IMG/VR virus record: IMGVR_UViG_3300045256_000050
Location: 180,987-244,986 of that record
Length of the DNA: 64,000 bases
Strand: one strand, 5' to 3'
Part shown: piece by piece, positions 184-62,483 of the stretch
Position numbering within the stretch: position 1 is the stretch's first letter
How the letters are laid out: every line of letters begins with the position of its first letter
Made by a program: the position numbers and the translations under genes
The notes under the pieces: model-generated
What the model saw: the letters and a program-made list of their open reading frames with translations, nothing else
The model's database searches: none
Told to the model about the DNA's origin: nothing

Positions 184-791
184 TCACTCCTCCTGAGTAA
201 CTGGTTCCGACTCCGTTTTGAGAACCGGGGTGGCCCCCTCGAACATTACCTCTTCCCGGTTGGCGATCCGCTTGAGCGGCGGGATGTCCAACGCCACCAC
301 TTCCTGACGGGTGATGGTGAGGTTCGGGTTCTTCCGGGCGGCGTGCATCGGCGGGAGCTTGTCCAACTCCTCGGTGCTGAACGGCCGCTCGGTCTTCCGT
401 CGAGCGAGGTAGGTGCCCCGCTTGAAGAAGTCCGGGTAGTTGTTCCAGTTGACCCCGTGGGTCTGGAACATCATCTCCTGCATCATGCTGCTCGACTTGT
501 TCTGCAACTCCTTGTGCGAGAACATCGACTGAGCCGCCATGCTGACGCTGTTCCGGGTGGCATCCATCTCCCGCCAGATCAGGTAGTTGGTCGCCTCCCA
601 ATCCGTCGGCACGTTGTACACCCGTGCGTCGAACAGGGGCATCCGGTCGGCCTTCTCTGGGAGGTAGTCCTTCAGGTTGCGGTTGAAAAACGCCGTGGTC
701 ATCGACGCCAACACGGAAGTCATCTTCAACAACTTGGCGTCGAAGAAGTGTTCGGCGTCGATCTCGTCGGAGTACCACACGAGCGAGATTT
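184..791 (-). CDS. thg1: Thg1-like tRNA(His) guanylyltransferase, exon 2
   Basis: EISLVWY...KMTSVLAS...FDARVYNVP...NYLIWREMDATRNSVS...GVNWNNYPDFFKRGT are Thg1/TLP motifs; frame joins exon 1 across the intron (G|AA = Glu). Confidence 0.92.
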
Positions 792-3150
792 GTCGGGTAA
801 GGGCGGAACATCGCTGCCCGCCCTCCCCTAAGAACCGTGCGTGTAAGTTTCCCTTCACACGGCTCAAGCAATCGGCTTAGCCACCAATCACGCCTTCTTC
901 CCGTGCTTTGCCAGATGGCAGTACAAGTGAAGAATGCGGAGGTTTGCGAGGCTGTCGTCCCCACCTTCCGAACGAGGCTTCACATGATGCTCATGTAACT
1001 CCTCGCCGTTGTTGAGGCTTTCGCCGCACTCAGGACACAAGAAGTTCTGTTGTTTGGCGACCTGACGCTTCTTGACAGTCAAGAGGTCGGACGCCTTTTC
1101 AGCGTCCCGCTCCTCCCAATACTGTTCAAGGGCGGGGTCGTCCCAGCAGGCGAACCGCTGGACAACAACGTGCCTCTTGATGAGAACCCAAGAAGGTTTC
1201 ATCATGTAGCATTCGGACGTGCCGAACACCCATTTTGCACCCTTCCGGTAGTTCCCCCAATACCGCTTCAGCCACCCCCAACTCTTGTTGGCGTGACGCC
1301 GCCTGACCCAACGGTATTGCAGTTGGACCAGATAGTTGTCGAGGCCGTCAAAAGTTCGGGACGCCACCGAGCATCGGAAGTAGTTGCACCACCCACGGAT
1401 GATCGGGTTCACTCTGGAGATCAGTTCTTCCAAAGGTCGCCCGTCATACTTGCGGAAGGTTTCCTTCAGCTTCTGCTTGATGGCCTTCACGGACTTCTTG
1501 CTGGGCTTGATGAAGAGCTTGTCGCCCTTCTTCGAGGTCAGCGTCTTGTACCTCCTGATGTTGAACCCAAGGAAGTCGAAACCTTCGTCCAGATGGGTGA
1601 TACGGGTCTTTTCCTCAGAGAGTTCCAGACCACGTTCCTTCAACCAGACAACTAGCTTCGCCCGAATTGCTTCGGCTTCCTCCTTGGAGTGACACAACAC
1701 CACGAAGTCGTCGGCGTACCTGACCAGCCCAACCGAGTTCGGAGCCAGTTCGTAGGTGGTCTTCCCGGTCCCCTTGCGGGTGTTTTTCCGGTACTTGACG
1801 CCCAGAACCTCCTCCATTCCGTGAAGAGCGATATTCGCCAACAAGGGACTAATCACTCCACCTTGCGGCGTACCCGCATGGGTGTCGTGGTAGCTGCCGT
1901 CGAATTCGACGTAACCCGCCTTCAGCCATTGCCGGATCAATTCCCTTGCGGGAAAATTCCCGATCAACTGCATCAGCTTGTCGTGGTCGATGTTGTCGAA
2001 GGCTCCCTTGATGTCAGCGTCCAGCACCCACAATTTCCCACCTTGGCTGGTGAGTTTGAAGATGCGAGCGATGGCATCTTGGCAAGAGCGTTTCGGTCGG
2101 AAACCGTAGGACGAGTCCTCGAACTTCGCTTCCCAGAACGGTTCCAGTGCGTTAAGCACCATCGCCTGAACAGCACGGTTCGTGATGTCAGGGATGCCCA
2201 AAGGACGGAGCTTGCCGTTGGCTTTCGGTATATAAATCCGTCGTGCGGGACACTTCTTGGCGAGTTGGTATTCAGCCAACTCGTCCACGAGGCGTCCCCT
2301 TGCTTCGGGGGTTTTGACAACGATCTTGTCCACCCCCGGCGTCGTCCTCCCTTTGTTCAACTGCGTCACCCGTCGAACCGCCAGACAGCGGTTCTCGTAG
2401 CTCCGCAGCATAACATGCTGAAGACTTCGCACCCTCTTGAGGTTTCCCTCTTTGGCGGCACGGAAAATCTCTTGGCGAAGGCGGCGTACAAAAGTGACGA
2501 CGTGGGACCAGTCAATGCTGTTCCAGTCGCACTTTTGCTGGGAACTTACGCTTTGCTTTTCGTTCTCCATTTATCCCTCCTTCCCTTGAAATCTTCCGTC
2601 CGATCACCTGTCGGAATTCAGCACCCTTTCGGGTCGGGCATTACCCTATCCAGCCGGTTATGGATTCCCGTTGCCTTTCGGCTGCTGGCATTCGCTTGAT
2701 CCGACATCCTTTACCTGCTGGGGAGTCCAGTGTTGCTCACGCTTCACTTGCTTTCGGGCCGAAACCTTCAAGACCCCAACAGGCTTAACACGTTCCGCAG
2801 AACCGAAGGTACGACTGCCGTAGGTAGTTCCTATACGCCGGGGATCGGAGGGGTGTTACTGGCCGTTGCCAGACGAAGACAGCCAGCCCTTCTGTGATCC
2901 CAGATAACCCGGCGTCAATTGCATTGCCGAGCCTACTCATCACGACGCTTCAAATGGAACTTCGCTTTCGCTTACCGTAGCAGTCTTTCCCCCGCCCCGG
3001 CTTTCTCCCGCAATTTGGGTACTCGCCGTTGGGCATTCTTGCTCCCAGCTTCACACGCCTCCGTTGCCAGAGACGCATGTGGGATGGGGAAAAGGTTTAA
3101 CACAAACCTTGGAGTTACCTCCACTTCAGTTCAGCGACCTCGTGTCGCAC
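792..3150 (-). mobile_element. Group II intron (IIB-like), 2359 nt, inserted in thg1
   Basis: 5' end GTGCG at 3150; domain V/VI GAGCCGTGTGAAGGGAAACTTACACGCACGGTTC...CCCTTACCCGAC with terminal AC at 792; encodes an RT ORF; removal restores an uninterrupted 279-aa Thg1 frame. Confidence 0.95.
888..2570 (-). CDS. Group II intron reverse transcriptase/maturase with C-terminal HNH endonuclease
   Basis: RPLGIP, SYGFRPKRS, DADIKGAFD, GTPQGGVISPLLANI, RYADD, FDFLGF, maturase X (NPIIRGWCNYF), CPECG...HEHHVKPRSEGGDDSLANLRILH. Confidence 0.97.
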   Translation of the reverse strand: MENEKQSVSSQQKCDWNSIDWSHVVTFVRRLRQEIFRAAKEGNLKRVRSLQHVMLRSYENRCLAVRRVTQLNKGRTTPGVDKIVVKTPEARGRLVDELAEYQLAKKCPARRIYIPKANGKLRPLGIPDITNRAVQAMVLNALEPFWEAKFEDSSYGFRPKRSCQDAIARIFKLTSQGGKLWVLDADIKGAFDNIDHDKLMQLIGNFPARELIRQWLKAGYVEFDGSYHDTHAGTPQGGVISPLLANIALHGMEEVLGVKYRKNTRKGTGKTTYELAPNSVGLVRYADDFVVLCHSKEEAEAIRAKLVVWLKERGLELSEEKTRITHLDEGFDFLGFNIRRYKTLTSKKGDKLFIKPSKKSVKAIKQKLKETFRKYDGRPLEELISRVNPIIRGWCNYFRCSVASRTFDGLDNYLVQLQYRWVRRRHANKSWGWLKRYWGNYRKGAKWVFGTSECYMMKPSWVLIKRHVVVQRFACWDDPALEQYWEERDAEKASDLLTVKKRQVAKQQNFLCPECGESLNNGEELHEHHVKPRSEGGDDSLANLRILHLYCHLAKHGKKA

Positions 3151-3382
3151 CGTCGCTCTGGGTGTAACCGACCCGTGCGTTCGTCTCTTGGACGAGGAAC
3201 TTGGTGGTCGCCACCATGAGCCGGGACAGCCGCTCGTCGAACGGCCGCTTCAGACCCGCAGTGAAGGTGTGGAACGCCTTGCCGTCCATCCGGGCCACGA
3301 TGGGAATGAGCGGAAGGAGTTGTTGGCCTGAGTATTGGAACTCGTAGCCCTTCATGCGGTCGCCGAGACTGTCCTTCTTCAT
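3151..3382 (-). CDS. thg1: Thg1-like tRNA(His) guanylyltransferase, exon 1
   Basis: LGDRMKGYE...IVARMDGKAFHTFT...PFD...GYTQSD is the conserved Thg1 N-terminus with both metal-binding Asp. Confidence 0.92.
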
Positions 3383-4712: not shown

Positions 4713-4956
4713 CCGATTCCTTCGGTAGTGGCGGGCACGGGTTGCCGTCCTCGTCCACGAATCCTGTCTTGTAAAAGTCGTACTCGATGTAGCCGCAGAA
4801 GCCAAGTCCGCAGAACTTCCAGTCGTCCTTGAACTGCTGGGGCACGTCCACCTTCACCCCATTCTCGTACAACTCAACCTCATGGACATTGAGGTTCTGC
4901 ATCTCCCGGTACTTCTGGATCAGTGCCCGGACTTCTTCTACGTCTACTCGGATCAT
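4678..4956 (-). CDS. Hypothetical protein
   Basis: Start MIRVDV overlaps the Nudix stop (ATGA). Confidence 0.6.
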   Translation of the reverse strand: MIRVDVEEVRALIQKYREMQNLNVHEVELYENGVKVDVPQQFKDDWKFCGLGFCGYIEYDFYKTGFVDEDGNPCPPLPKESDDRSGTQTTGG

Positions 4957-5606
4957 GTGGGTGGCAACATGTAAGAGGTTGAGATACGGCCCATCTGCCG
5001 GATCATGTACAGCATGGGCCACGCCTTCGCAGCGATCACCACGCCCTCGAACTCGTCGGTCCGGTCGCAGAGCCGCTTGACGCCCTCGTAGTCGAGTAGC
5101 ATCGGCTCGATGATTTCTTCTTCTTCGTGGCCTTCCACGTCGAGCTTGCCGCTCGCCAGACAGAAGACCATCTGCACCGACTCGTCGCTCAGCCCGGCGG
5201 ACGACACGATGGGCGGGCTGACTTGCAGCACACGCTCCAGCGTCAGCCCGGCCTCTTCTTTCAGTTCACGACGGGCGGCTTCGACCGGACCCTCGTCGCC
5301 GTCGATCAGTCCCGCAACGAACCCATACTCGAAGTTCTGGATCGGGTGCCGCCACTCCTTCGTGACGAGCAGCTTGAGTTCGTCCTGGCCTTCGACTGCG
5401 ACGAAGGCCATGCAGATCACGGCGTCCGGTTGGATGTTCTGGAAGCTCTTGGAGAGGGCCGGGAGCTTCTTGCGGGAAGCCATCAGCCACGAACCCTTCT
5501 TCAACGTCCCGTTGCCTTCATCCCCGGTCTGGTAGTCCATCCGGTAGACGTTGAGCCAGGGGGTGTTGAGCAGGGTTTCCATCCCGGTGAGGGTCGTCGG
5601 CTTCAT
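4953..5606 (-). CDS. Nudix hydrolase (ADP-ribose pyrophosphatase-like)
   Basis: Nudix box GLIDGDEGPVEAARRELKEEAG; SAGLSDE downstream. Confidence 0.9.
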   Translation of the reverse strand: MKPTTLTGMETLLNTPWLNVYRMDYQTGDEGNGTLKKGSWLMASRKKLPALSKSFQNIQPDAVICMAFVAVEGQDELKLLVTKEWRHPIQNFEYGFVAGLIDGDEGPVEAARRELKEEAGLTLERVLQVSPPIVSSAGLSDESVQMVFCLASGKLDVEGHEEEEIIEPMLLDYEGVKRLCDRTDEFEGVVIAAKAWPMLYMIRQMGRISTSYMLPPT

Positions 5607-5607
5607 C

Positions 5608-5835
5608 TCAGTCGTCTCCGAAAAGTTTGCGGGCATTAGCGATGGCGGGCACGAGGAGATCGAAAGCCTTCTTCTGGCTCTCGATCTCACGCTCGTGCCC
5701 GTCAGTGACGACCCCCGTCGGCGTCAGTACGCCGACGGTGCCGTAGGTATCAAGGTGCTTGTAAGCGTGTTCCGCCGCCTCCAGCAGCTTCAGGAACACA
5801 ACGTCGTCACCCACGTTCTTCTGTTGCTTAGGCAT
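5608..5835 (-). CDS. Hypothetical protein
   Basis: ORF in same-strand operon with SD. Confidence 0.55.
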   Translation of the reverse strand: MPKQQKNVGDDVVFLKLLEAAEHAYKHLDTYGTVGVLTPTGVVTDGHEREIESQKKAFDLLVPAIANARKLFGDD

Positions 5836-5850: not shown

Positions 5851-6948
5851 TTAGTGGAACTCGGTCCCACCCTTCCGCTCGTGGTAGTCCACCGAGATCG
5901 ACTTCAGGATAACACGCCCGAAGTTCGGCAGCAACTCGGAATACCGTTCCTTAACAGGCGTGACCACCACGCCCTCCCGGCCCTTGAACTTACTGGTGTT
6001 CTCCTCGGCCGAGCAGACGGTCGTCGTGCCGTCCGTGTGCTGCGTCAGCACGTCCATACTGAACGGCCCACGGTACAGGATCGGCACCATGTCGATCCCG
6101 TGCTTCTTGAACAACTCCACTTTCACGTCGAAATCCAGGTACTTGCCGTTCACGGCGATGTCGAACGCCCGGTAGGCGGCGGTCTTCACCCCGTAGGCCA
6201 TGTCCTGAATGCCCGGTCCGTAGATTTCTCCGTACACCACCACGTTGTTCTGGTGGGCACAGAGTTCCACGAGCAGGTTCTTCATGTTGTCGGTCATCGG
6301 CAGCCAGTAGAGCGACTTCACGCCCTTGTCGTTCTGCGGCTTCCGACGGGTGCCGTGCGAACCGGCGACGAACGTCCACTCCATGCTGCCGTCCGTGTCG
6401 TTCGGCTGCTGGACGATCCCGACCCGGCTGTTGGTGCCGTGCAGCTTCTCCGTGAAGATCACTTCCTCGCCGTCCACCAGCACGCCGGGGAAGTTCCCGA
6501 TGTTCTCGATGTCGGTGTAGGCGTGGAACGTCCCGATGGGCGGGGCGGCATCGCCGTCCATCGCCTTGACCGGCGGCTCGTACTTCTTCACGCCCCAGGC
6601 TTCGACCATGCTCGTCCCGACGGGGAGGCTCTGGTCGTCGAGCGGGGCGAGGAACCCCTGCGACCGCTCACCCCGGAGGCGGGCCGCACGGATACGCTGG
6701 CCCGGTGGCCGGGTGCCGTCGATCTGCTTGGCGAGCGGGGCGGTGTACTTCGTGATGCCCCACTTGTCCGTCAGAGCTTCACTGACGACAGAATCGGGCG
6801 GCAGGTACACGCCTTTCTGGCCGACCTGCCAGTTGCCGGTCCCGCTGATGACCCACCAGTTTTTGACCCGAACGAGTTCGAGTCGGTCGGCACCGGGGTG
6901 CTTCTTGACTTCTTCGACCTGAACTACGTCAACGATCAGGGTACTCAT
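5851..6948 (-). CDS. ATP-dependent RNA ligase (DRB0094/Rnl2-like family)
   Basis: N-terminal KHPGADRLELV domain; nucleotidyltransferase motifs TEKLHGTN, YGEIYG, YRAFDI, REGVVV, LKSIS. Confidence 0.88.
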   Translation of the reverse strand: MSTLIVDVVQVEEVKKHPGADRLELVRVKNWWVISGTGNWQVGQKGVYLPPDSVVSEALTDKWGITKYTAPLAKQIDGTRPPGQRIRAARLRGERSQGFLAPLDDQSLPVGTSMVEAWGVKKYEPPVKAMDGDAAPPIGTFHAYTDIENIGNFPGVLVDGEEVIFTEKLHGTNSRVGIVQQPNDTDGSMEWTFVAGSHGTRRKPQNDKGVKSLYWLPMTDNMKNLLVELCAHQNNVVVYGEIYGPGIQDMAYGVKTAAYRAFDIAVNGKYLDFDVKVELFKKHGIDMVPILYRGPFSMDVLTQHTDGTTTVCSAEENTSKFKGREGVVVTPVKERYSELLPNFGRVILKSISVDYHERKGGTEFH

Positions 6949-6992
6949 CGTGCCCTCCTTTCGGCAGTAAGACACTGCCCAGGAGGGCAGGT

Positions 6993-7202
6993 TCACATCT
7001 TGAAGGAATCGCCCTTGTGGCGGATTTCAAAGTCAGTGGCTTCTCTCACCAGCACTGACTCAAAATACCCTGGATATGCGTGTTGTAAAGCGTCAGAGAT
7101 GGATTCTGCGTAACGGAGGATGGGGAACTGGTCCCCATCCTCTTTCTCCAGCATGATGTACCACCACCGCCAGCGACCGACACGCCCTAGCATGCTGGTC
7201 AT
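6993..7202 (-). CDS. Hypothetical protein
   Basis: Short ORF with ATGA coupling to the upstream gene. Confidence 0.4.
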   Translation of the reverse strand: MTSMLGRVGRWRWWYIMLEKEDGDQFPILRYAESISDALQHAYPGYFESVLVREATDFEIRHKGDSFKM

Positions 7203-22972: not shown

Positions 22973-24136
22973 ATGGCAAACCGGCATAACTACTCGTACC
23001 GTTTTCGGCTAATGCCGAACCAAGAACAACGAGTGCTTCTCGCAAAGCACTTCGGGGCGATCCGGTACGCCTACAACCACTTCCTCGCCGCCCGCAAGGA
23101 CAAGTACCTCACGGCGAAGAAGTCCAGCAACTACTACGGCGACTGCAAGGACTTGACCGAGTTGAAGAAGACCCTGCCGTGGATGAAGGAAGTGTACTCG
23201 CAGTCCTTGCAGTTCTCGCTCAAGTGCTTGGATGCTGCCTACAACAACTTCTTCGCTGGCAGAGGCAAGTTCCCGGTCTTCAAGGCGAAGCACGCCCACC
23301 AGTCCTTCCGTGTCCCACAGAACGTCAGGGTGGTCGAGAACAAGTTGGTTATCCCGAAGTTCCTTGAGGGGATCAGGATGGTCAAGCATCGGGAAGTCGA
23401 GGGCGAAATCAAGTTCTGTACTATCAGCAGGAATAAGGCGGGGCAGTACCACGTCTCGATCACCGTCGAGCGAGACATACCGCAGTTGCCGGTGGTCGAT
23501 ACGGAAGTCGGTGTCGATCTCGGCATCAAGACGCTGGCAACGTGCAGCGACGGCAAGGTGTACGAGAACAAGAAACCGTACCGGAGGTTGAGCCGCAGGA
23601 TCAAGATGGTACAGCGGCGGTTGAGCAAGAAGAAGAAGGGAAGCAAGAACAGGCAGCGAGCGAAGTGTCGGCTCGCCAAGATGCACCTGAAAGTCAAGAA
23701 CATTAGGAACGACCACTTGCACAAGACGACGACCAAGATCATCCGTGAGAACCAAACGGTGTACTTGGAGACGTTGAATGTGCAAGGCATGATGAAGAAC
23801 CGCTGCCTTGCCGGGGCTATCGCTGACGCTGCGTTCTACGAGACACGCAGGCAGTTAGAGTACAAGGCGGGCTGGTACGGGAGGGTGGTCAAGTATCTTG
23901 ACCGTTGGTTCCCGTCCAGTAAAACGTGCAGTGGTTGTGGCTTCATCAAGCAAGACCTTCGGCTGTCGGATCGAGAGTGGTCGTGTCCTCGTTGTGGCGA
24001 GGTACATGACCGTGATTTGAATGCGGCGAAGACGATCTTGCAGCAGGGTAAAATTGAGAGTAAACTACCGTTGGAACGACGGGAAGTAAAGCGTGTGGAC
24101 TCAGGAAGAACTCCGACTGAACTTTTGGTCGGCTGA
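22973..24136 (+). CDS. tnpB: TnpB RNA-guided endonuclease (IS605/IS1341 type)
   Basis: N-terminal HTH (YRFRLMPNQEQ...FGAIRYAYN), RuvC I VGVDLG, II YLETLNV, III DRDLNAA, Zn finger CSGC/CPRC. Confidence 0.96.
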   Translation: MANRHNYSYRFRLMPNQEQRVLLAKHFGAIRYAYNHFLAARKDKYLTAKKSSNYYGDCKDLTELKKTLPWMKEVYSQSLQFSLKCLDAAYNNFFAGRGKFPVFKAKHAHQSFRVPQNVRVVENKLVIPKFLEGIRMVKHREVEGEIKFCTISRNKAGQYHVSITVERDIPQLPVVDTEVGVDLGIKTLATCSDGKVYENKKPYRRLSRRIKMVQRRLSKKKKGSKNRQRAKCRLAKMHLKVKNIRNDHLHKTTTKIIRENQTVYLETLNVQGMMKNRCLAGAIADAAFYETRRQLEYKAGWYGRVVKYLDRWFPSSKTCSGCGFIKQDLRLSDREWSCPRCGEVHDRDLNAAKTILQQGKIESKLPLERREVKRVDSGRTPTELLVG

Positions 24137-62407: not shown

Positions 62408-62409
62408 AG

Positions 62410-62483
62410 TGCCGTCGGCGAGAGTTGAACTCGCAACATTCAGATTCTAAGTCTGACGACTCTGCCAGTTGGTCTACGACGGC
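62410..62483 (-). tRNA. tRNA-Leu(TAG) with short variable loop, no encoded CCA
   Basis: GCCGTCG/CGACGGC acceptor, GAC/GTC D-stem with TGG, TCAGA-CTTAGAA-TCTGA, 5-nt variable ATGTT, GCGAG-TTCAACT-CTCGC, A73; 74 nt. Confidence 0.92.

What the first reader, a model, noticed from the sequence alone, without database searches (positions are those of the whole stretch)
184..3382. Intact group II intron inserted in the catalytic QSD|E motif of a phage Thg1-like gene
Seen: exon 1 ends ...CAG AGC GAC G, the intron runs GTGCG (3150) to ...CCCGAC (792), and exon 2 starts AA ATC TCG. Splicing rebuilds GYTQSDEISLVW and a 279-aa Thg1. The RT has YADD plus HNH, so it looks mobile. Candidate pairings: TCTGGG (2904-2899) with exon CCCAGA, and a partial CGTC (2875-2872) with exon GACG. 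Known: group II introns are uncommon in phages, and conserved active-site codons are favoured homing sites. Inference: production of this tRNA-repair enzyme depends on maturase-assisted splicing.
Basis: partly seen in the sequence, partly recalled or inferred. Interest (0 to 1): 0.75.

Follow-up and report, generated by a model that had tools for sequence, protein, structure and literature searches.

The report
Mobile group II intron splitting phage Thg1
A complete, apparently mobile group II intron sits between the codons for two active-site residues of a tRNA-repair (Thg1-like) gene in a huge hot-spring phage; it is a clear new example of a kind of phage intron first catalogued in 2025.

Summary
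On the minus strand, Thg1 exon 1 is 3382-3151, a 2,359-nt group II intron is 3150-792, and exon 2 is 791-184. The intron has GUGCG at its 5' end, a 34-nt D5, a D6 with a bulged A, and a 560-aa RT-X-D-HNH protein. Joining the exons gives a 279-aa Thg1-like protein reading GYTQSD|EISLVW. The D and E flanking the intron are the conserved carboxylates D75/E76 of Bacillus thuringiensis TLP. A syntenic relative with no intron aligns at DNA level up to both boundaries, and its Thg1 is 81-86% identical in protein.

The same intron occupies the same site in at least four much more diverged Thg1 alleles, and a further allele in one run carries a 99%-identical copy between unrelated flanks. The intron tree therefore disagrees with the host-gene tree, which indicates retrohoming. 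The ribozyme fold shows 61 compensatory pairs, and the intron protein has dN/dS of about 0.09.

The record is a tailed phage (portal, tape measure, baseplate). Splicing itself was not observed. EBS1 is correctly placed but forms only 4 bp. Group II introns in phages, including jumbo phages and IMG/VR contigs, were described by Merk, Jones and Eddy (2025), so this is a new member of a known kind.

The parts
3151..3382 (-). Thg1-like gene, exon 1. It has 77 codons plus the first base of the Glu78 codon, and contains the metal-binding Asp33 and Asp77.
   Evidence: Pfam Thg1 positions 2-71, E = 1.5e-16. It aligns to B. thuringiensis TLP 4KGK residues 2-75 and ends on D75. D30 and D75 are the metal ligands (PMC3701042).
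792..3150 (-). Group II intron, 2,359 nt, running GUGCG...CCCGAC. It is IIB-like and encodes a chloroplast-like-type protein.
   Evidence: Rfam RF00029 and RF02012. Consensus fold with 61 compensatory pairs. It is a clean 2,359-nt insertion relative to the intron-less syntenic contig L111. It is present as a single copy in the 245-kb record.
2610..3150 (-). Ribozyme domains D1 (about 3150-2789), D2 (about 2784-2713) and D3 (about 2705-2610).
   Evidence: RNAalifold consensus on six related introns, alignment A2. Coordinates were converted from alignment columns.
3048..3051 (-). Four-nucleotide bulge AAGC in D1 (epsilon'/lambda region), matching the IIB consensus AARC.
   Evidence: Unpaired columns 106-109 lie between two covarying helices. 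The classification criterion is quoted from Merk et al. 2025.
2860..2885 (-). D1 d3 hairpin. Its terminal loop carries EBS1: CGTC at 2875-2872 pairs with the exon's last four bases, GACG.
   Evidence: Hairpin columns 272-278/291-297. The same loop gives 6 bp in L015 (CGTCTG/CGGATG), 5 bp in L011, and 6 bp in L019, which has a different target (CAGAGC/GCTCTG).
2899..2904 (-). It is doubtful.
   Evidence: It is complementary to exon positions -12 to -7. Its GGG forms part of the helix at columns 256-261/312-317, which covaries in L011, L014 and L015. The complementarity is absent in those three alleles. A 6-mer match is expected by chance.
888..2570 (-). Intron-encoded protein in D4, 560 aa, with RT (YADD at 285-288), X/maturase, D and HNH endonuclease domains. 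AAGGAGG lies 7 nt upstream of the ATG.
   Evidence: Pfam RVT_N, RVT_1, GIIM and HNH; TIGR04416 at 378 bits. It aligns end to end with the Thermosynechococcus T.el4h RT, PDB 6ME0, at 396 bits. dN/dS is 0.086 against L022. Upstream sequence.
832..865 (-). Domain 5, 34 nt, with the AGC catalytic triad and a GAAA loop.
   Evidence: RF00029 alignment. RNA fold z = -4.55.
795..828 (-). Domain 6 with a bulged adenosine at 798, seven nt from the 3' splice site. This is the presumed branch point.
   Evidence: MFE fold. RF00029 alignment.
184..791 (-). Thg1-like gene, exon 2. It holds the last two bases of the Glu78 codon, 201 further codons and the stop codon.
   Evidence: Pfam Thg1 positions 80-130 plus Thg1C. 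It aligns to 4KGK residues 81-205. Exon 2 is 81-86% identical to the intron-less proteins P0122-P0124.

Best explanation
This is a bona fide, structurally complete group II intron. It is IIB-type and encodes an RT-maturase-HNH protein of the chloroplast-like lineage. It has retrohomed into the Thg1-like 3'-5' RNA polymerase gene of a huge tailed phage, between the first and second base of the Glu78 codon, immediately after the metal-binding Asp77.

The gene is transcribed through the intron. The intron protein is translated from D4 and binds the ribozyme. The bulged A798 of D6 attacks the 5' splice site, and exon ligation recreates ...QSDE... and a 279-aa enzyme. That enzyme lies in a cluster with RNA ligase and Nudix genes.

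The excised lariat-protein particle can reverse-splice into intron-less Thg1 alleles of related phages during co-infection. This explains why the intron is shared by very diverged alleles and is missing from the closest ones.

Shown: the anatomy, the precise boundaries, the presence/absence polymorphism, and selection on both the ribozyme and the protein. Inferred: that splicing occurs, that it uses a branching mechanism, that it needs the maturase, and that mobility is ongoing.
For: **Anatomy**
- Rfam D5/D6 at 55 bits and D1 at 40.6 bits.
- A 34-nt D5 and a bulged A in D6.
- An AAGC bulge of IIB type.
- 160 consensus pairs, 61 with compensatory changes.
- A full-length intron protein, TIGR04416 at 378 bits, closest to the IIB1/CL1 T.el4h RT (class from PMC8643678).

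**Boundaries and restored gene**
- A 279-aa product.
- D33, D77 and E78 correspond to BtTLP D30, D75 and E76.
- The intron-less proteins P0122-P0124 (279-281 aa, 81-86% identical over exon 2) read GYTQSDEISLVWY.
- blastn against the syntenic contig L111 breaks exactly at the two boundaries.

**Mobility**
- The same site is occupied in L022, L011, L014 and L015.
- Against L022 the intron is 89% identical in nt, while exon 2 is 66% in nt and 52% in aa.
- Against L022 the intron protein has dS of 0.46, while Thg1 exon 2 has dN of 0.52.
- At four-fold sites the intron protein is 48-53% identical against 32-37% for Thg1.
- Run X5 holds contigs 98.8-99.2% identical over 781-3167. Their flanks are then unlike the window and translate to a different Thg1 allele.
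- GC3 of the intron protein is 0.72, against 0.88 for Thg1 and RNA ligase.

**Constraint**
- Intron protein dN/dS is 0.086. Thg1 dN/dS is 0.09-0.16 against intron-less relatives.

**Phage identity**
- Portal, tape measure and baseplate wedge in the same record.
Against: - No RNA evidence exists. The four runs laid showed no 3151/791 joint, and they were contigs that are largely DNA-like.
- No exact spliced junction or intron-less allele identical to the window across the junction was found in two collections.
- Exon recognition looks weak in this allele. EBS1-IBS1 is only 4 bp, and at the canonical EBS2 position only GGG/CCC can pair.
- A close relative, L113, carries a deletion that removes exon 1 and about 2.15 kb of the intron, so decay of this locus does happen.
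- Only 48% of the genome is in hand, so a second, uninterrupted Thg1 copy cannot be excluded.
Confidence: 0.85

Rival explanations
1. The intron is a dead insertion and Thg1 is a pseudogene in this phage. The element no longer splices, and the enzyme is not made.
For: - EBS1 forms only 4 bp, and the canonical EBS2 is poor.
- A related contig, L113, shows a deletion derivative lacking exon 1.
- No spliced RNA was seen.
Against: - Both exons are open, with all three catalytic carboxylates.
- Thg1 dN/dS is 0.09-0.16.
- The ribozyme helices are kept by compensatory changes.
- Intron protein dN/dS is 0.086, with RT, X and HNH motifs intact.
- An identical copy occurs in an independently catalogued IMG/VR contig, and 99% copies occur in other samples.
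Confidence: 0.07
2. The intron is more than a neutral passenger and gives the carrier phage an advantage in mixed infections. Its RNP and HNH endonuclease cut intron-less Thg1 alleles of competitors and convert them, as described for some phage group I intron endonucleases (from my own knowledge). Alternatively, it gates Thg1 production after transcription.
For: - The intron is spread across very diverged alleles at one site, while the closest alleles lack it.
- The En domain is retained under purifying selection.
- A second group II intron lies in the neighbouring RNA ligase gene of a relative.
Against: There is no direct evidence. The same pattern is expected from ordinary selfish retrohoming.
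Confidence: 0.07
3. This is an assembly chimera in which a bacterial group II intron was mis-joined into a phage contig.
For: Group II introns are repeats that often break or confuse metagenome assemblies. Many relatives lie on 2-2.6-kb contigs.
Against: - The junctions fall to the base inside one codon and restore a conserved motif.
- The same arrangement occurs in another IMG/VR contig (L010) and in contigs from separate assemblies with diverged sequence (L011, L014, L015, L022).
- Four DNA runs hold 98-100% of the sampled words of the stretch, though these may be the source sample filed more than once.
Confidence: 0.01

Closest known systems
Phage group II introns catalogued by Merk, Jones and Eddy (NAR 2025, PMC12350094)
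   Same: - Same kind of element: Rfam-detectable group II introns interrupting conserved phage genes, including in jumbo phages.
- That study reports hits in 9,229 IMG/VR contigs, about 0.06-0.07% of genomes.
- Here, 36 of 50,697 deposited phage records matched the intron protein.
- That study uses the same validation logic: an intron-less homologue, EBS/IBS pairings and intron-protein domains.
   Different: - Thg1 was not found in that paper's two held supplementary files, and a full-text search for group II intron + phage + Thg1 returned only unrelated papers. The main text read does not name the host genes of its 20 curated introns.
- Most of its 20 introns lack a full RT-X-D-En protein: seven encode RTs.
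- Here there is also a set of orthologous introns at one site, with direct evidence of intron/host-gene discordance.
Thermosynechococcus elongatus Th.e.I3 / T.el4h (IIB1 ribozyme, CL1 reverse transcriptase; PDB 6ME0/6MEC) and E. coli EcI5
   Same: - The intron protein aligns end to end (residues 6-558 against 13-549, 396 bits) with the same RT-X-D-En layout.
- IIB features are shared: a 34-nt D5, an AARC-type bulge, and EBS1 in the d3 terminal loop.
   Different: - No phylogeny was run, so CL1 against CL2 is not settled.
- The nearest named cellular relatives of the intron protein are only 50-55% identical: Microcoleus, Nostoc, Chloroflexi, Binatia and Planctomycetota.
- In this allele EBS1 forms 4 bp, against the 6-bp pairing seen in relatives L015 and L019, and the canonical EBS2 is not evident.
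Bacterial Thg1-like protein BtTLP (PDB 4KGK) and phage Thg1 homologues such as 201phi2-1 gp319
   Same: - Best solved relative for both exons.
- The three conserved carboxylates are present.
- 160 phage records carry Thg1 homologues, many of them jumbo phages.
   Different: - The gene here is split by an intron.
- The four intron-less homologues examined (L003-L006) and the listed phage records with annotation show it as one reading frame.
- No enzymatic activity was tested.
Group I introns and homing endonucleases in conserved phage genes (for example T4 td and nrd genes; from my own knowledge)
   Same: These are selfish self-splicing elements inserted at highly conserved, functionally critical codons, with patchy distribution among related phages.
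   Different: The ribozyme class and mobility mechanism differ: reverse splicing plus target-primed reverse transcription, instead of double-strand-break repair.

Membership tests
Group II intron | Conserved 5' end GUGYG and 3' end AY | tested here: met
   GUGCG at 3150-3146 and ...GAC at 794-792. The same ends occur in all orthologues.
Group II intron | Domain 5: a 34-nt hairpin with an AGC triad and a bulge. Domain 6: a bulged branch-point A. | tested here: met
   RF00029 at 55 bits against a cut-off of 40. The fold has a bulged A at 798, z = -4.55.
Group II intron | Multi-domain D1-D3 fold conserved by covariation | tested here: met
   160 consensus pairs, 61 with both-sided changes, across six introns. 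RF02012 matches only the first D1 hairpins.
Group II intron | EBS1-IBS1 and EBS2-IBS2 pairing with the 5' exon | tested here: inconclusive
EBS1 lies in the d3 loop. It forms 4 bp here and 5-6 bp in L011, L015 and L019. EBS2 at the canonical place covaries between L011 (TGTG/CACA) and L015 (TGCG/CGCA), but in the window only GGG/CCC can pair.
Group II intron | Intron-encoded RT with maturase (X) domain in D4 | tested here: met
   RVT_N, RVT_1, GIIM and HNH; TIGR04416 at 378 bits against a cut-off of 300.
Group II intron | Self-splicing or protein-assisted splicing with lariat formation | not testable with these tools
   No joint was seen in the four runs laid.
Subgroup IIB1 with CL1-lineage RT | IIB-type epsilon'/lambda 4-nt bulge AARC | tested here: met
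   AAGC at 3051-3048 is unpaired between covarying helices. Criterion.
Subgroup IIB1 with CL1-lineage RT | Intron protein groups with CL1 RTs in a phylogeny | tested here: inconclusive
   The best solved relative is the CL1 T.el4h RT at 396 bits, against LtrA at 177 and IIC RTs at 124-161. No tree with classified references was built.
Subgroup IIB1 with CL1-lineage RT | EBS2 three nt downstream of the 5' strand of ID(iv), with EBS2a-IBS2a at -14; EBS3-IBS3 | tested here: inconclusive
   The layout fits L011 and L015 but not clearly the window (rule from PMC8643678). EBS3 was not located.
Thg1/TLP 3'-5' nucleotidyltransferase | Thg1 catalytic domain plus Thg1 C-terminal domain | tested here: met
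   PF04446 is split across the exons (positions 2-71 and 80-130), with PF14413 in exon 2.
Thg1/TLP 3'-5' nucleotidyltransferase | Three conserved carboxylates (BtTLP D30, D75, E76) | tested here: met
   D33, D77 and E78 in the joined product.
Thg1/TLP 3'-5' nucleotidyltransferase | 3'-5' nucleotide addition / tRNA 5'-end repair activity | not testable with these tools
   Requires an enzyme assay.
Tailed bacteriophage (Caudoviricetes) | Virion hallmark genes on the same contig | tested here: met
   Portal (phrog_213, 1.3e-67), tape measure and baseplate wedge in G000. Pfam terminase 6C and HK97 capsid models found nothing in this half-genome.

The most novel reading that the evidence does not exclude
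The intron, together with a second one found in the adjacent RNA ligase gene of a relative, is part of an intron-mediated contest between co-infecting huge phages. Its RNP/HNH machinery attacks intron-less alleles of the tRNA-repair cluster and drives that genomic region into progeny. Alternatively, splicing acts as a timed gate on tRNA-repair enzyme production.
Probability: 0.08. Interest if true: 0.6.

Novelty: new member of a known kind. Interest (0 to 1): 0.35.

Why it matters
This is a particularly clean, fully equipped example of a group II intron in a huge phage. The ribozyme carries an RT-maturase-endonuclease protein, and the intron sits at the catalytic carboxylates of an unusual enzyme, a reverse-direction RNA polymerase used for tRNA 5'-end repair.

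The set of alleles found here forms a natural series for studying group II retrohoming between phages. It includes intron-plus, intron-minus and deletion-derivative alleles, plus a near-identical intron in a diverged allele.

The existence of such introns in phages was published in 2025, and the mechanism is the standard one. The value is therefore in the example and the comparative data, not in a new principle.

Tried and rejected
- **RNA evidence.** It gave only contigs covering the intron and no 3151/791 joint, so splicing could not be assessed.
- **Exact spliced-junction 26-mer.** No match in viral contigs or metagenome contigs.
- **Degenerate 5'-junction pattern.** Only the twin contig in viral contigs and nothing in metagenome contigs. 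JGI contigs known to carry the junction (L016, L018) were not returned either, so these zeros say nothing about rarity.
- **megablast of 8 kb against deposited phages.** No match.
- **A 639-aa neighbouring protein.** No phage match.
- **Pfam terminase 6C and HK97 capsid models on the whole record.** Nothing found. Phage identity was settled instead with PHROGs on large ORFs.
- **Permissive Rfam search of the intron.** No further D1-D4 model matched, so subclass could not be read from Rfam.
Rejected as the best assignment.
- **Host inference from relatives of the intron protein.** The nearest named genomes are only 50-55% identical and span several phyla.
- **Pair-count control on the 593-column structure.** Not run, to avoid typing a long structure string.
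Full report
**Observation**

Coordinates in this section are on the minus strand. The sequence is exactly as described.
- Exon 1 runs 3382-3151 and ends ...CAG AGC GAC G.
- The next bases are GTGCG, at 3150.
- The intervening sequence ends ...CCCGAC at 792.
- Exon 2 begins AA ATC TCG at 791 and runs to the stop at 184.

The exons are 232 and 608 nt. Joined, they give a 279-aa protein reading ...VGYTQSD|EISLVWY....

Rfam places the D5/D6 model RF00029 at 867-792 (55 bits, cut-off 40), with its 3' end on base 792. It places a D1 model, RF02012, at 3111-3033 (40.6 bits, cut-off 34).

The 560-aa ORF at 2570-888 carries RVT_N, RVT_1, GIIM and HNH domains. It passes the NCBIfam group II RT/maturase equivalog model (378 bits, cut-off 300). 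YADD is at residues 285-288, and a strong AAGGAGG lies before the ATG.

Pfam Thg1 is split across the exons, with profile positions 2-71 in exon 1 and 80-130 in exon 2. Thg1C follows in exon 2.

**Host gene**

The best solved relative of both exons is the Bacillus thuringiensis Thg1-like protein 4KGK. That alignment ends exon 1 on BtTLP D75.

The structure paper states that D30, D75 and E76 are the three conserved carboxylates. D30 and D75 bind the two metals, and D75A greatly reduces activity (PMC3701042). Here these residues are D33, D77 and E78. The intron therefore lies after the first base of the E78 codon, directly behind the metal ligand D77.

**Genome context**

The window is the last 64 kb of a 245-kb IMG/VR record that CheckV rates 48% complete. 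The record has 58% G+C.

Large ORFs elsewhere in the record match PHROGs for portal (1.3e-67), tape measure and baseplate wedge. It is therefore a tailed phage, probably around 0.5 Mb in size.

Upstream of Thg1 lie a NUDIX gene (4953-5690) and an RNA ligase gene (5851-6996). Sequencing-run metadata point to hot-spring and microbial-mat metagenomes as the source.

**Intron anatomy**

D5 is 34 nt (865-832), with the AGC triad and a GAAA loop. D6 (828-795) has a bulged A at 798, seven nt from the 3' splice site. The fold z-score is -4.55.

I aligned the 5' 560-580 nt of six related introns. The consensus fold has 160 pairs, and 61 of them keep pairing through changes on both sides. A 4-nt unpaired AAGC (3051-3048) sits between two covarying helices. 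Merk et al. use this AARC bulge as the IIB signature.

The intron protein aligns end to end with the RT of the Thermosynechococcus T.el4h intron, 6ME0, at 396 bits. LtrA scores 177 bits and the IIC RTs score 124-161 bits. T.el4h is a IIB1 intron with a chloroplast-like 1 RT (PMC8643678). The element is therefore IIB-like with a CL-type protein. No tree was built to fix the sublineage.

**Exon-binding sites**

In relatives the same loop pairs with each one's own exon:
- L015: CGTCTG with CGGATG, 6 bp.
- L011: CGTCG with CGATG, 5 bp.
- L019, which sits in an unrelated target: CAGAGC with GCTCTG, 6 bp.

EBS1 is therefore correctly placed, but in this allele it forms only 4 bp.

Four points count against it:
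- Perfect 6-mers are expected by chance: three observed, shuffle mean 1.6, P(at least one) 0.72.
- Its GGG belongs to the helix at columns 256-261/312-317, which covaries: GGGATC/GATCCC, AGGATC/GATCCT, AGGCTC/GAGCCT and AGGTTC/GAACCT.
- The complementarity is absent in L011, L014 and L015.
- In IIB1/IIB2 introns EBS2 lies three nt downstream of the 5' strand of the ID(iv) helix, which I take to be this helix, and pairs with about -13 to -9.

At that canonical place L011 has TGTG against CACA, and L015 has TGCG against CGCA. That is a compensatory pair. The window can form only GGG/CCC.

**Intron-less homologues**

Huge-phage records LR745206, LR745208 and LR756511, and Pseudomonas phage 201phi2-1 gp319, read GYTQSDEI(T/S)L in one frame.

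Much closer alleles also exist. P0122, P0123 and P0124 (279-281 aa) are 81-86% identical over exon 2 and read GYTQSDEISLVWY.

P0124 lies on contig L111 in the same gene order: RNA ligase, NUDIX, two small ORFs, Thg1, then UDG. blastn of the window against L111 stops two bases before the 5' splice site and resumes on the first base of exon 2, and the L111 sequence is continuous across the gap. The 2,359 nt are therefore a clean insertion.

**Mobility**

The same site is occupied by related introns in L022, L011/L012, L014 and L015-L018. One of these families reaches a 608-kb contig.

| Comparison with the window | Intron or intron protein | Thg1 |
|---|---|---|
| L011, L014, L015: overall identity | about 77% nt; intron protein 72-81% aa | 54-65% aa |
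| L011, L014, L015: identity at four-fold sites | 48-53% | 32-37% |
| L022 | 89% nt; intron protein dS 0.46 | exon 2 66% nt, 52% aa; dN 0.52 |

The closest Thg1 alleles therefore lack the intron, while distant alleles share it.

In run X5 (wastewater), contigs are 98.8-99.2% identical to the window from 781 to 3167. Beyond those points they become unlike it. The loose ends translate to a different Thg1 allele...EETNCCMAYTQSD|EISLCWLADDF....

GC3 of the intron protein is 0.72, against 0.88 for Thg1 and RNA ligase. The intron protein is under purifying selection, with dN/dS of 0.086 against L022. Together these results indicate repeated retrohoming among phage Thg1 alleles.

**What is not shown**

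No spliced RNA was observed. The laid runs were assembled contigs, largely DNA-like, with no 3151/791 joint. Exact junction searches found nothing. Dependence on the maturase follows from general knowledge of group II introns and was not tested here. Half the genome is missing, so a second Thg1 copy cannot be excluded.

**Prior knowledge and verdict**

Merk, Jones and Eddy (NAR 2025, PMC12350094) showed that group II introns occur in diverse phages, including jumbo phages. They reported hits in 9,229 IMG/VR contigs, about 0.06-0.07% of genomes. This matches the 36 of 50,697 deposited records found here with the intron protein.

I found no description of a Thg1-borne intron. The finding is real and well formed, but it is a new member of a known kind. 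Its added value is the allele series documenting homing.

Noticed in passing
L014:1-1524 (related metagenome contig, Logan SRR24210337): A second group II intron interrupts the RNA ligase gene of a related phage. An RVT_N/RVT_1/GIIM ORF runs to 1505, and D5/D6 lies at 1447-1524 (RF00029 at 38.6 bits, just under the cut-off; E = 1.8e-5). The downstream exon reads IRNFPGVLVDGEEVVIDEKIHGSN, about 20 codons before the KxHGxN motif. The window's RNA ligase (5851-6996) is uninterrupted.
   Followed up: partly
L113:1-2780 (JGI 3300078835), junction at about 1599: A close relative, with exon 2 80% identical in aa, keeps only the last ~200 nt of the intron plus exon 2. The sequence equivalent to window 3567-995 (exon 1 and about 2.15 kb of intron) is missing. 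This is either a deletion derivative that makes Thg1 a pseudogene or a misassembly.
   Followed up: partly
L014:7096-7098: The Thg1 of L014 has an in-frame TGA (QEML*QKGINWNDYP) at a position where L011 has Trp. Similarity continues in the same frame beyond it. This could be a nonsense mutation, a sequencing error or TGA recoding.
   Followed up: no
L015:6773-7444: The Thg1 of L015 carries an extra stretch of about 40 residues, rich in Gly, Cys and Pro, after ...LKEKVG. The stretch is absent from all other alleles.
   Followed up: no
window 22973-24136 (+): A TnpB-like gene (HTH_OrfB_IS605, OrfB_IS605 and the Cas12f1-like TNB domain; phrog_506 at 419 bits). It is a second kind of mobile element in the same phage window.
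   Followed up: partly
L024:580-600 (Microcoleus asticus contig): A related intron (intron protein 54% identical) is inserted right after ...TATGCGGATGACATGGTAA. That sequence codes YADDMV, so the intron sits inside the YADD motif of another reverse transcriptase. This is a twintron-like arrangement.
   Followed up: no
L019 (JGI 3300029179 contig, 13.8 kb): A relative with a 64%-identical intron protein lies in a phage-like contig with at least eight tRNA genes and many small ORFs. It occupies an unrelated target (...GTGGCTCTG|) and has a perfectly matching 6-nt EBS1.
   Followed up: partly
window 978-2970, runs X10/X11 (plant/moss metatranscriptome libraries): Contigs about 98.8% identical to the intron's ORF region appear in RNA-labelled libraries from moss and plant samples, with adapter at their ends and no exon sequence. 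A near-identical intron therefore occurs well outside hot springs. Whether these contigs derive from RNA or DNA cannot be told.
   Followed up: no
window 62409-62483 (-): A single tRNA-Leu gene (anticodon TAG by ARAGORN; Rfam 60.5 bits).
   Followed up: no
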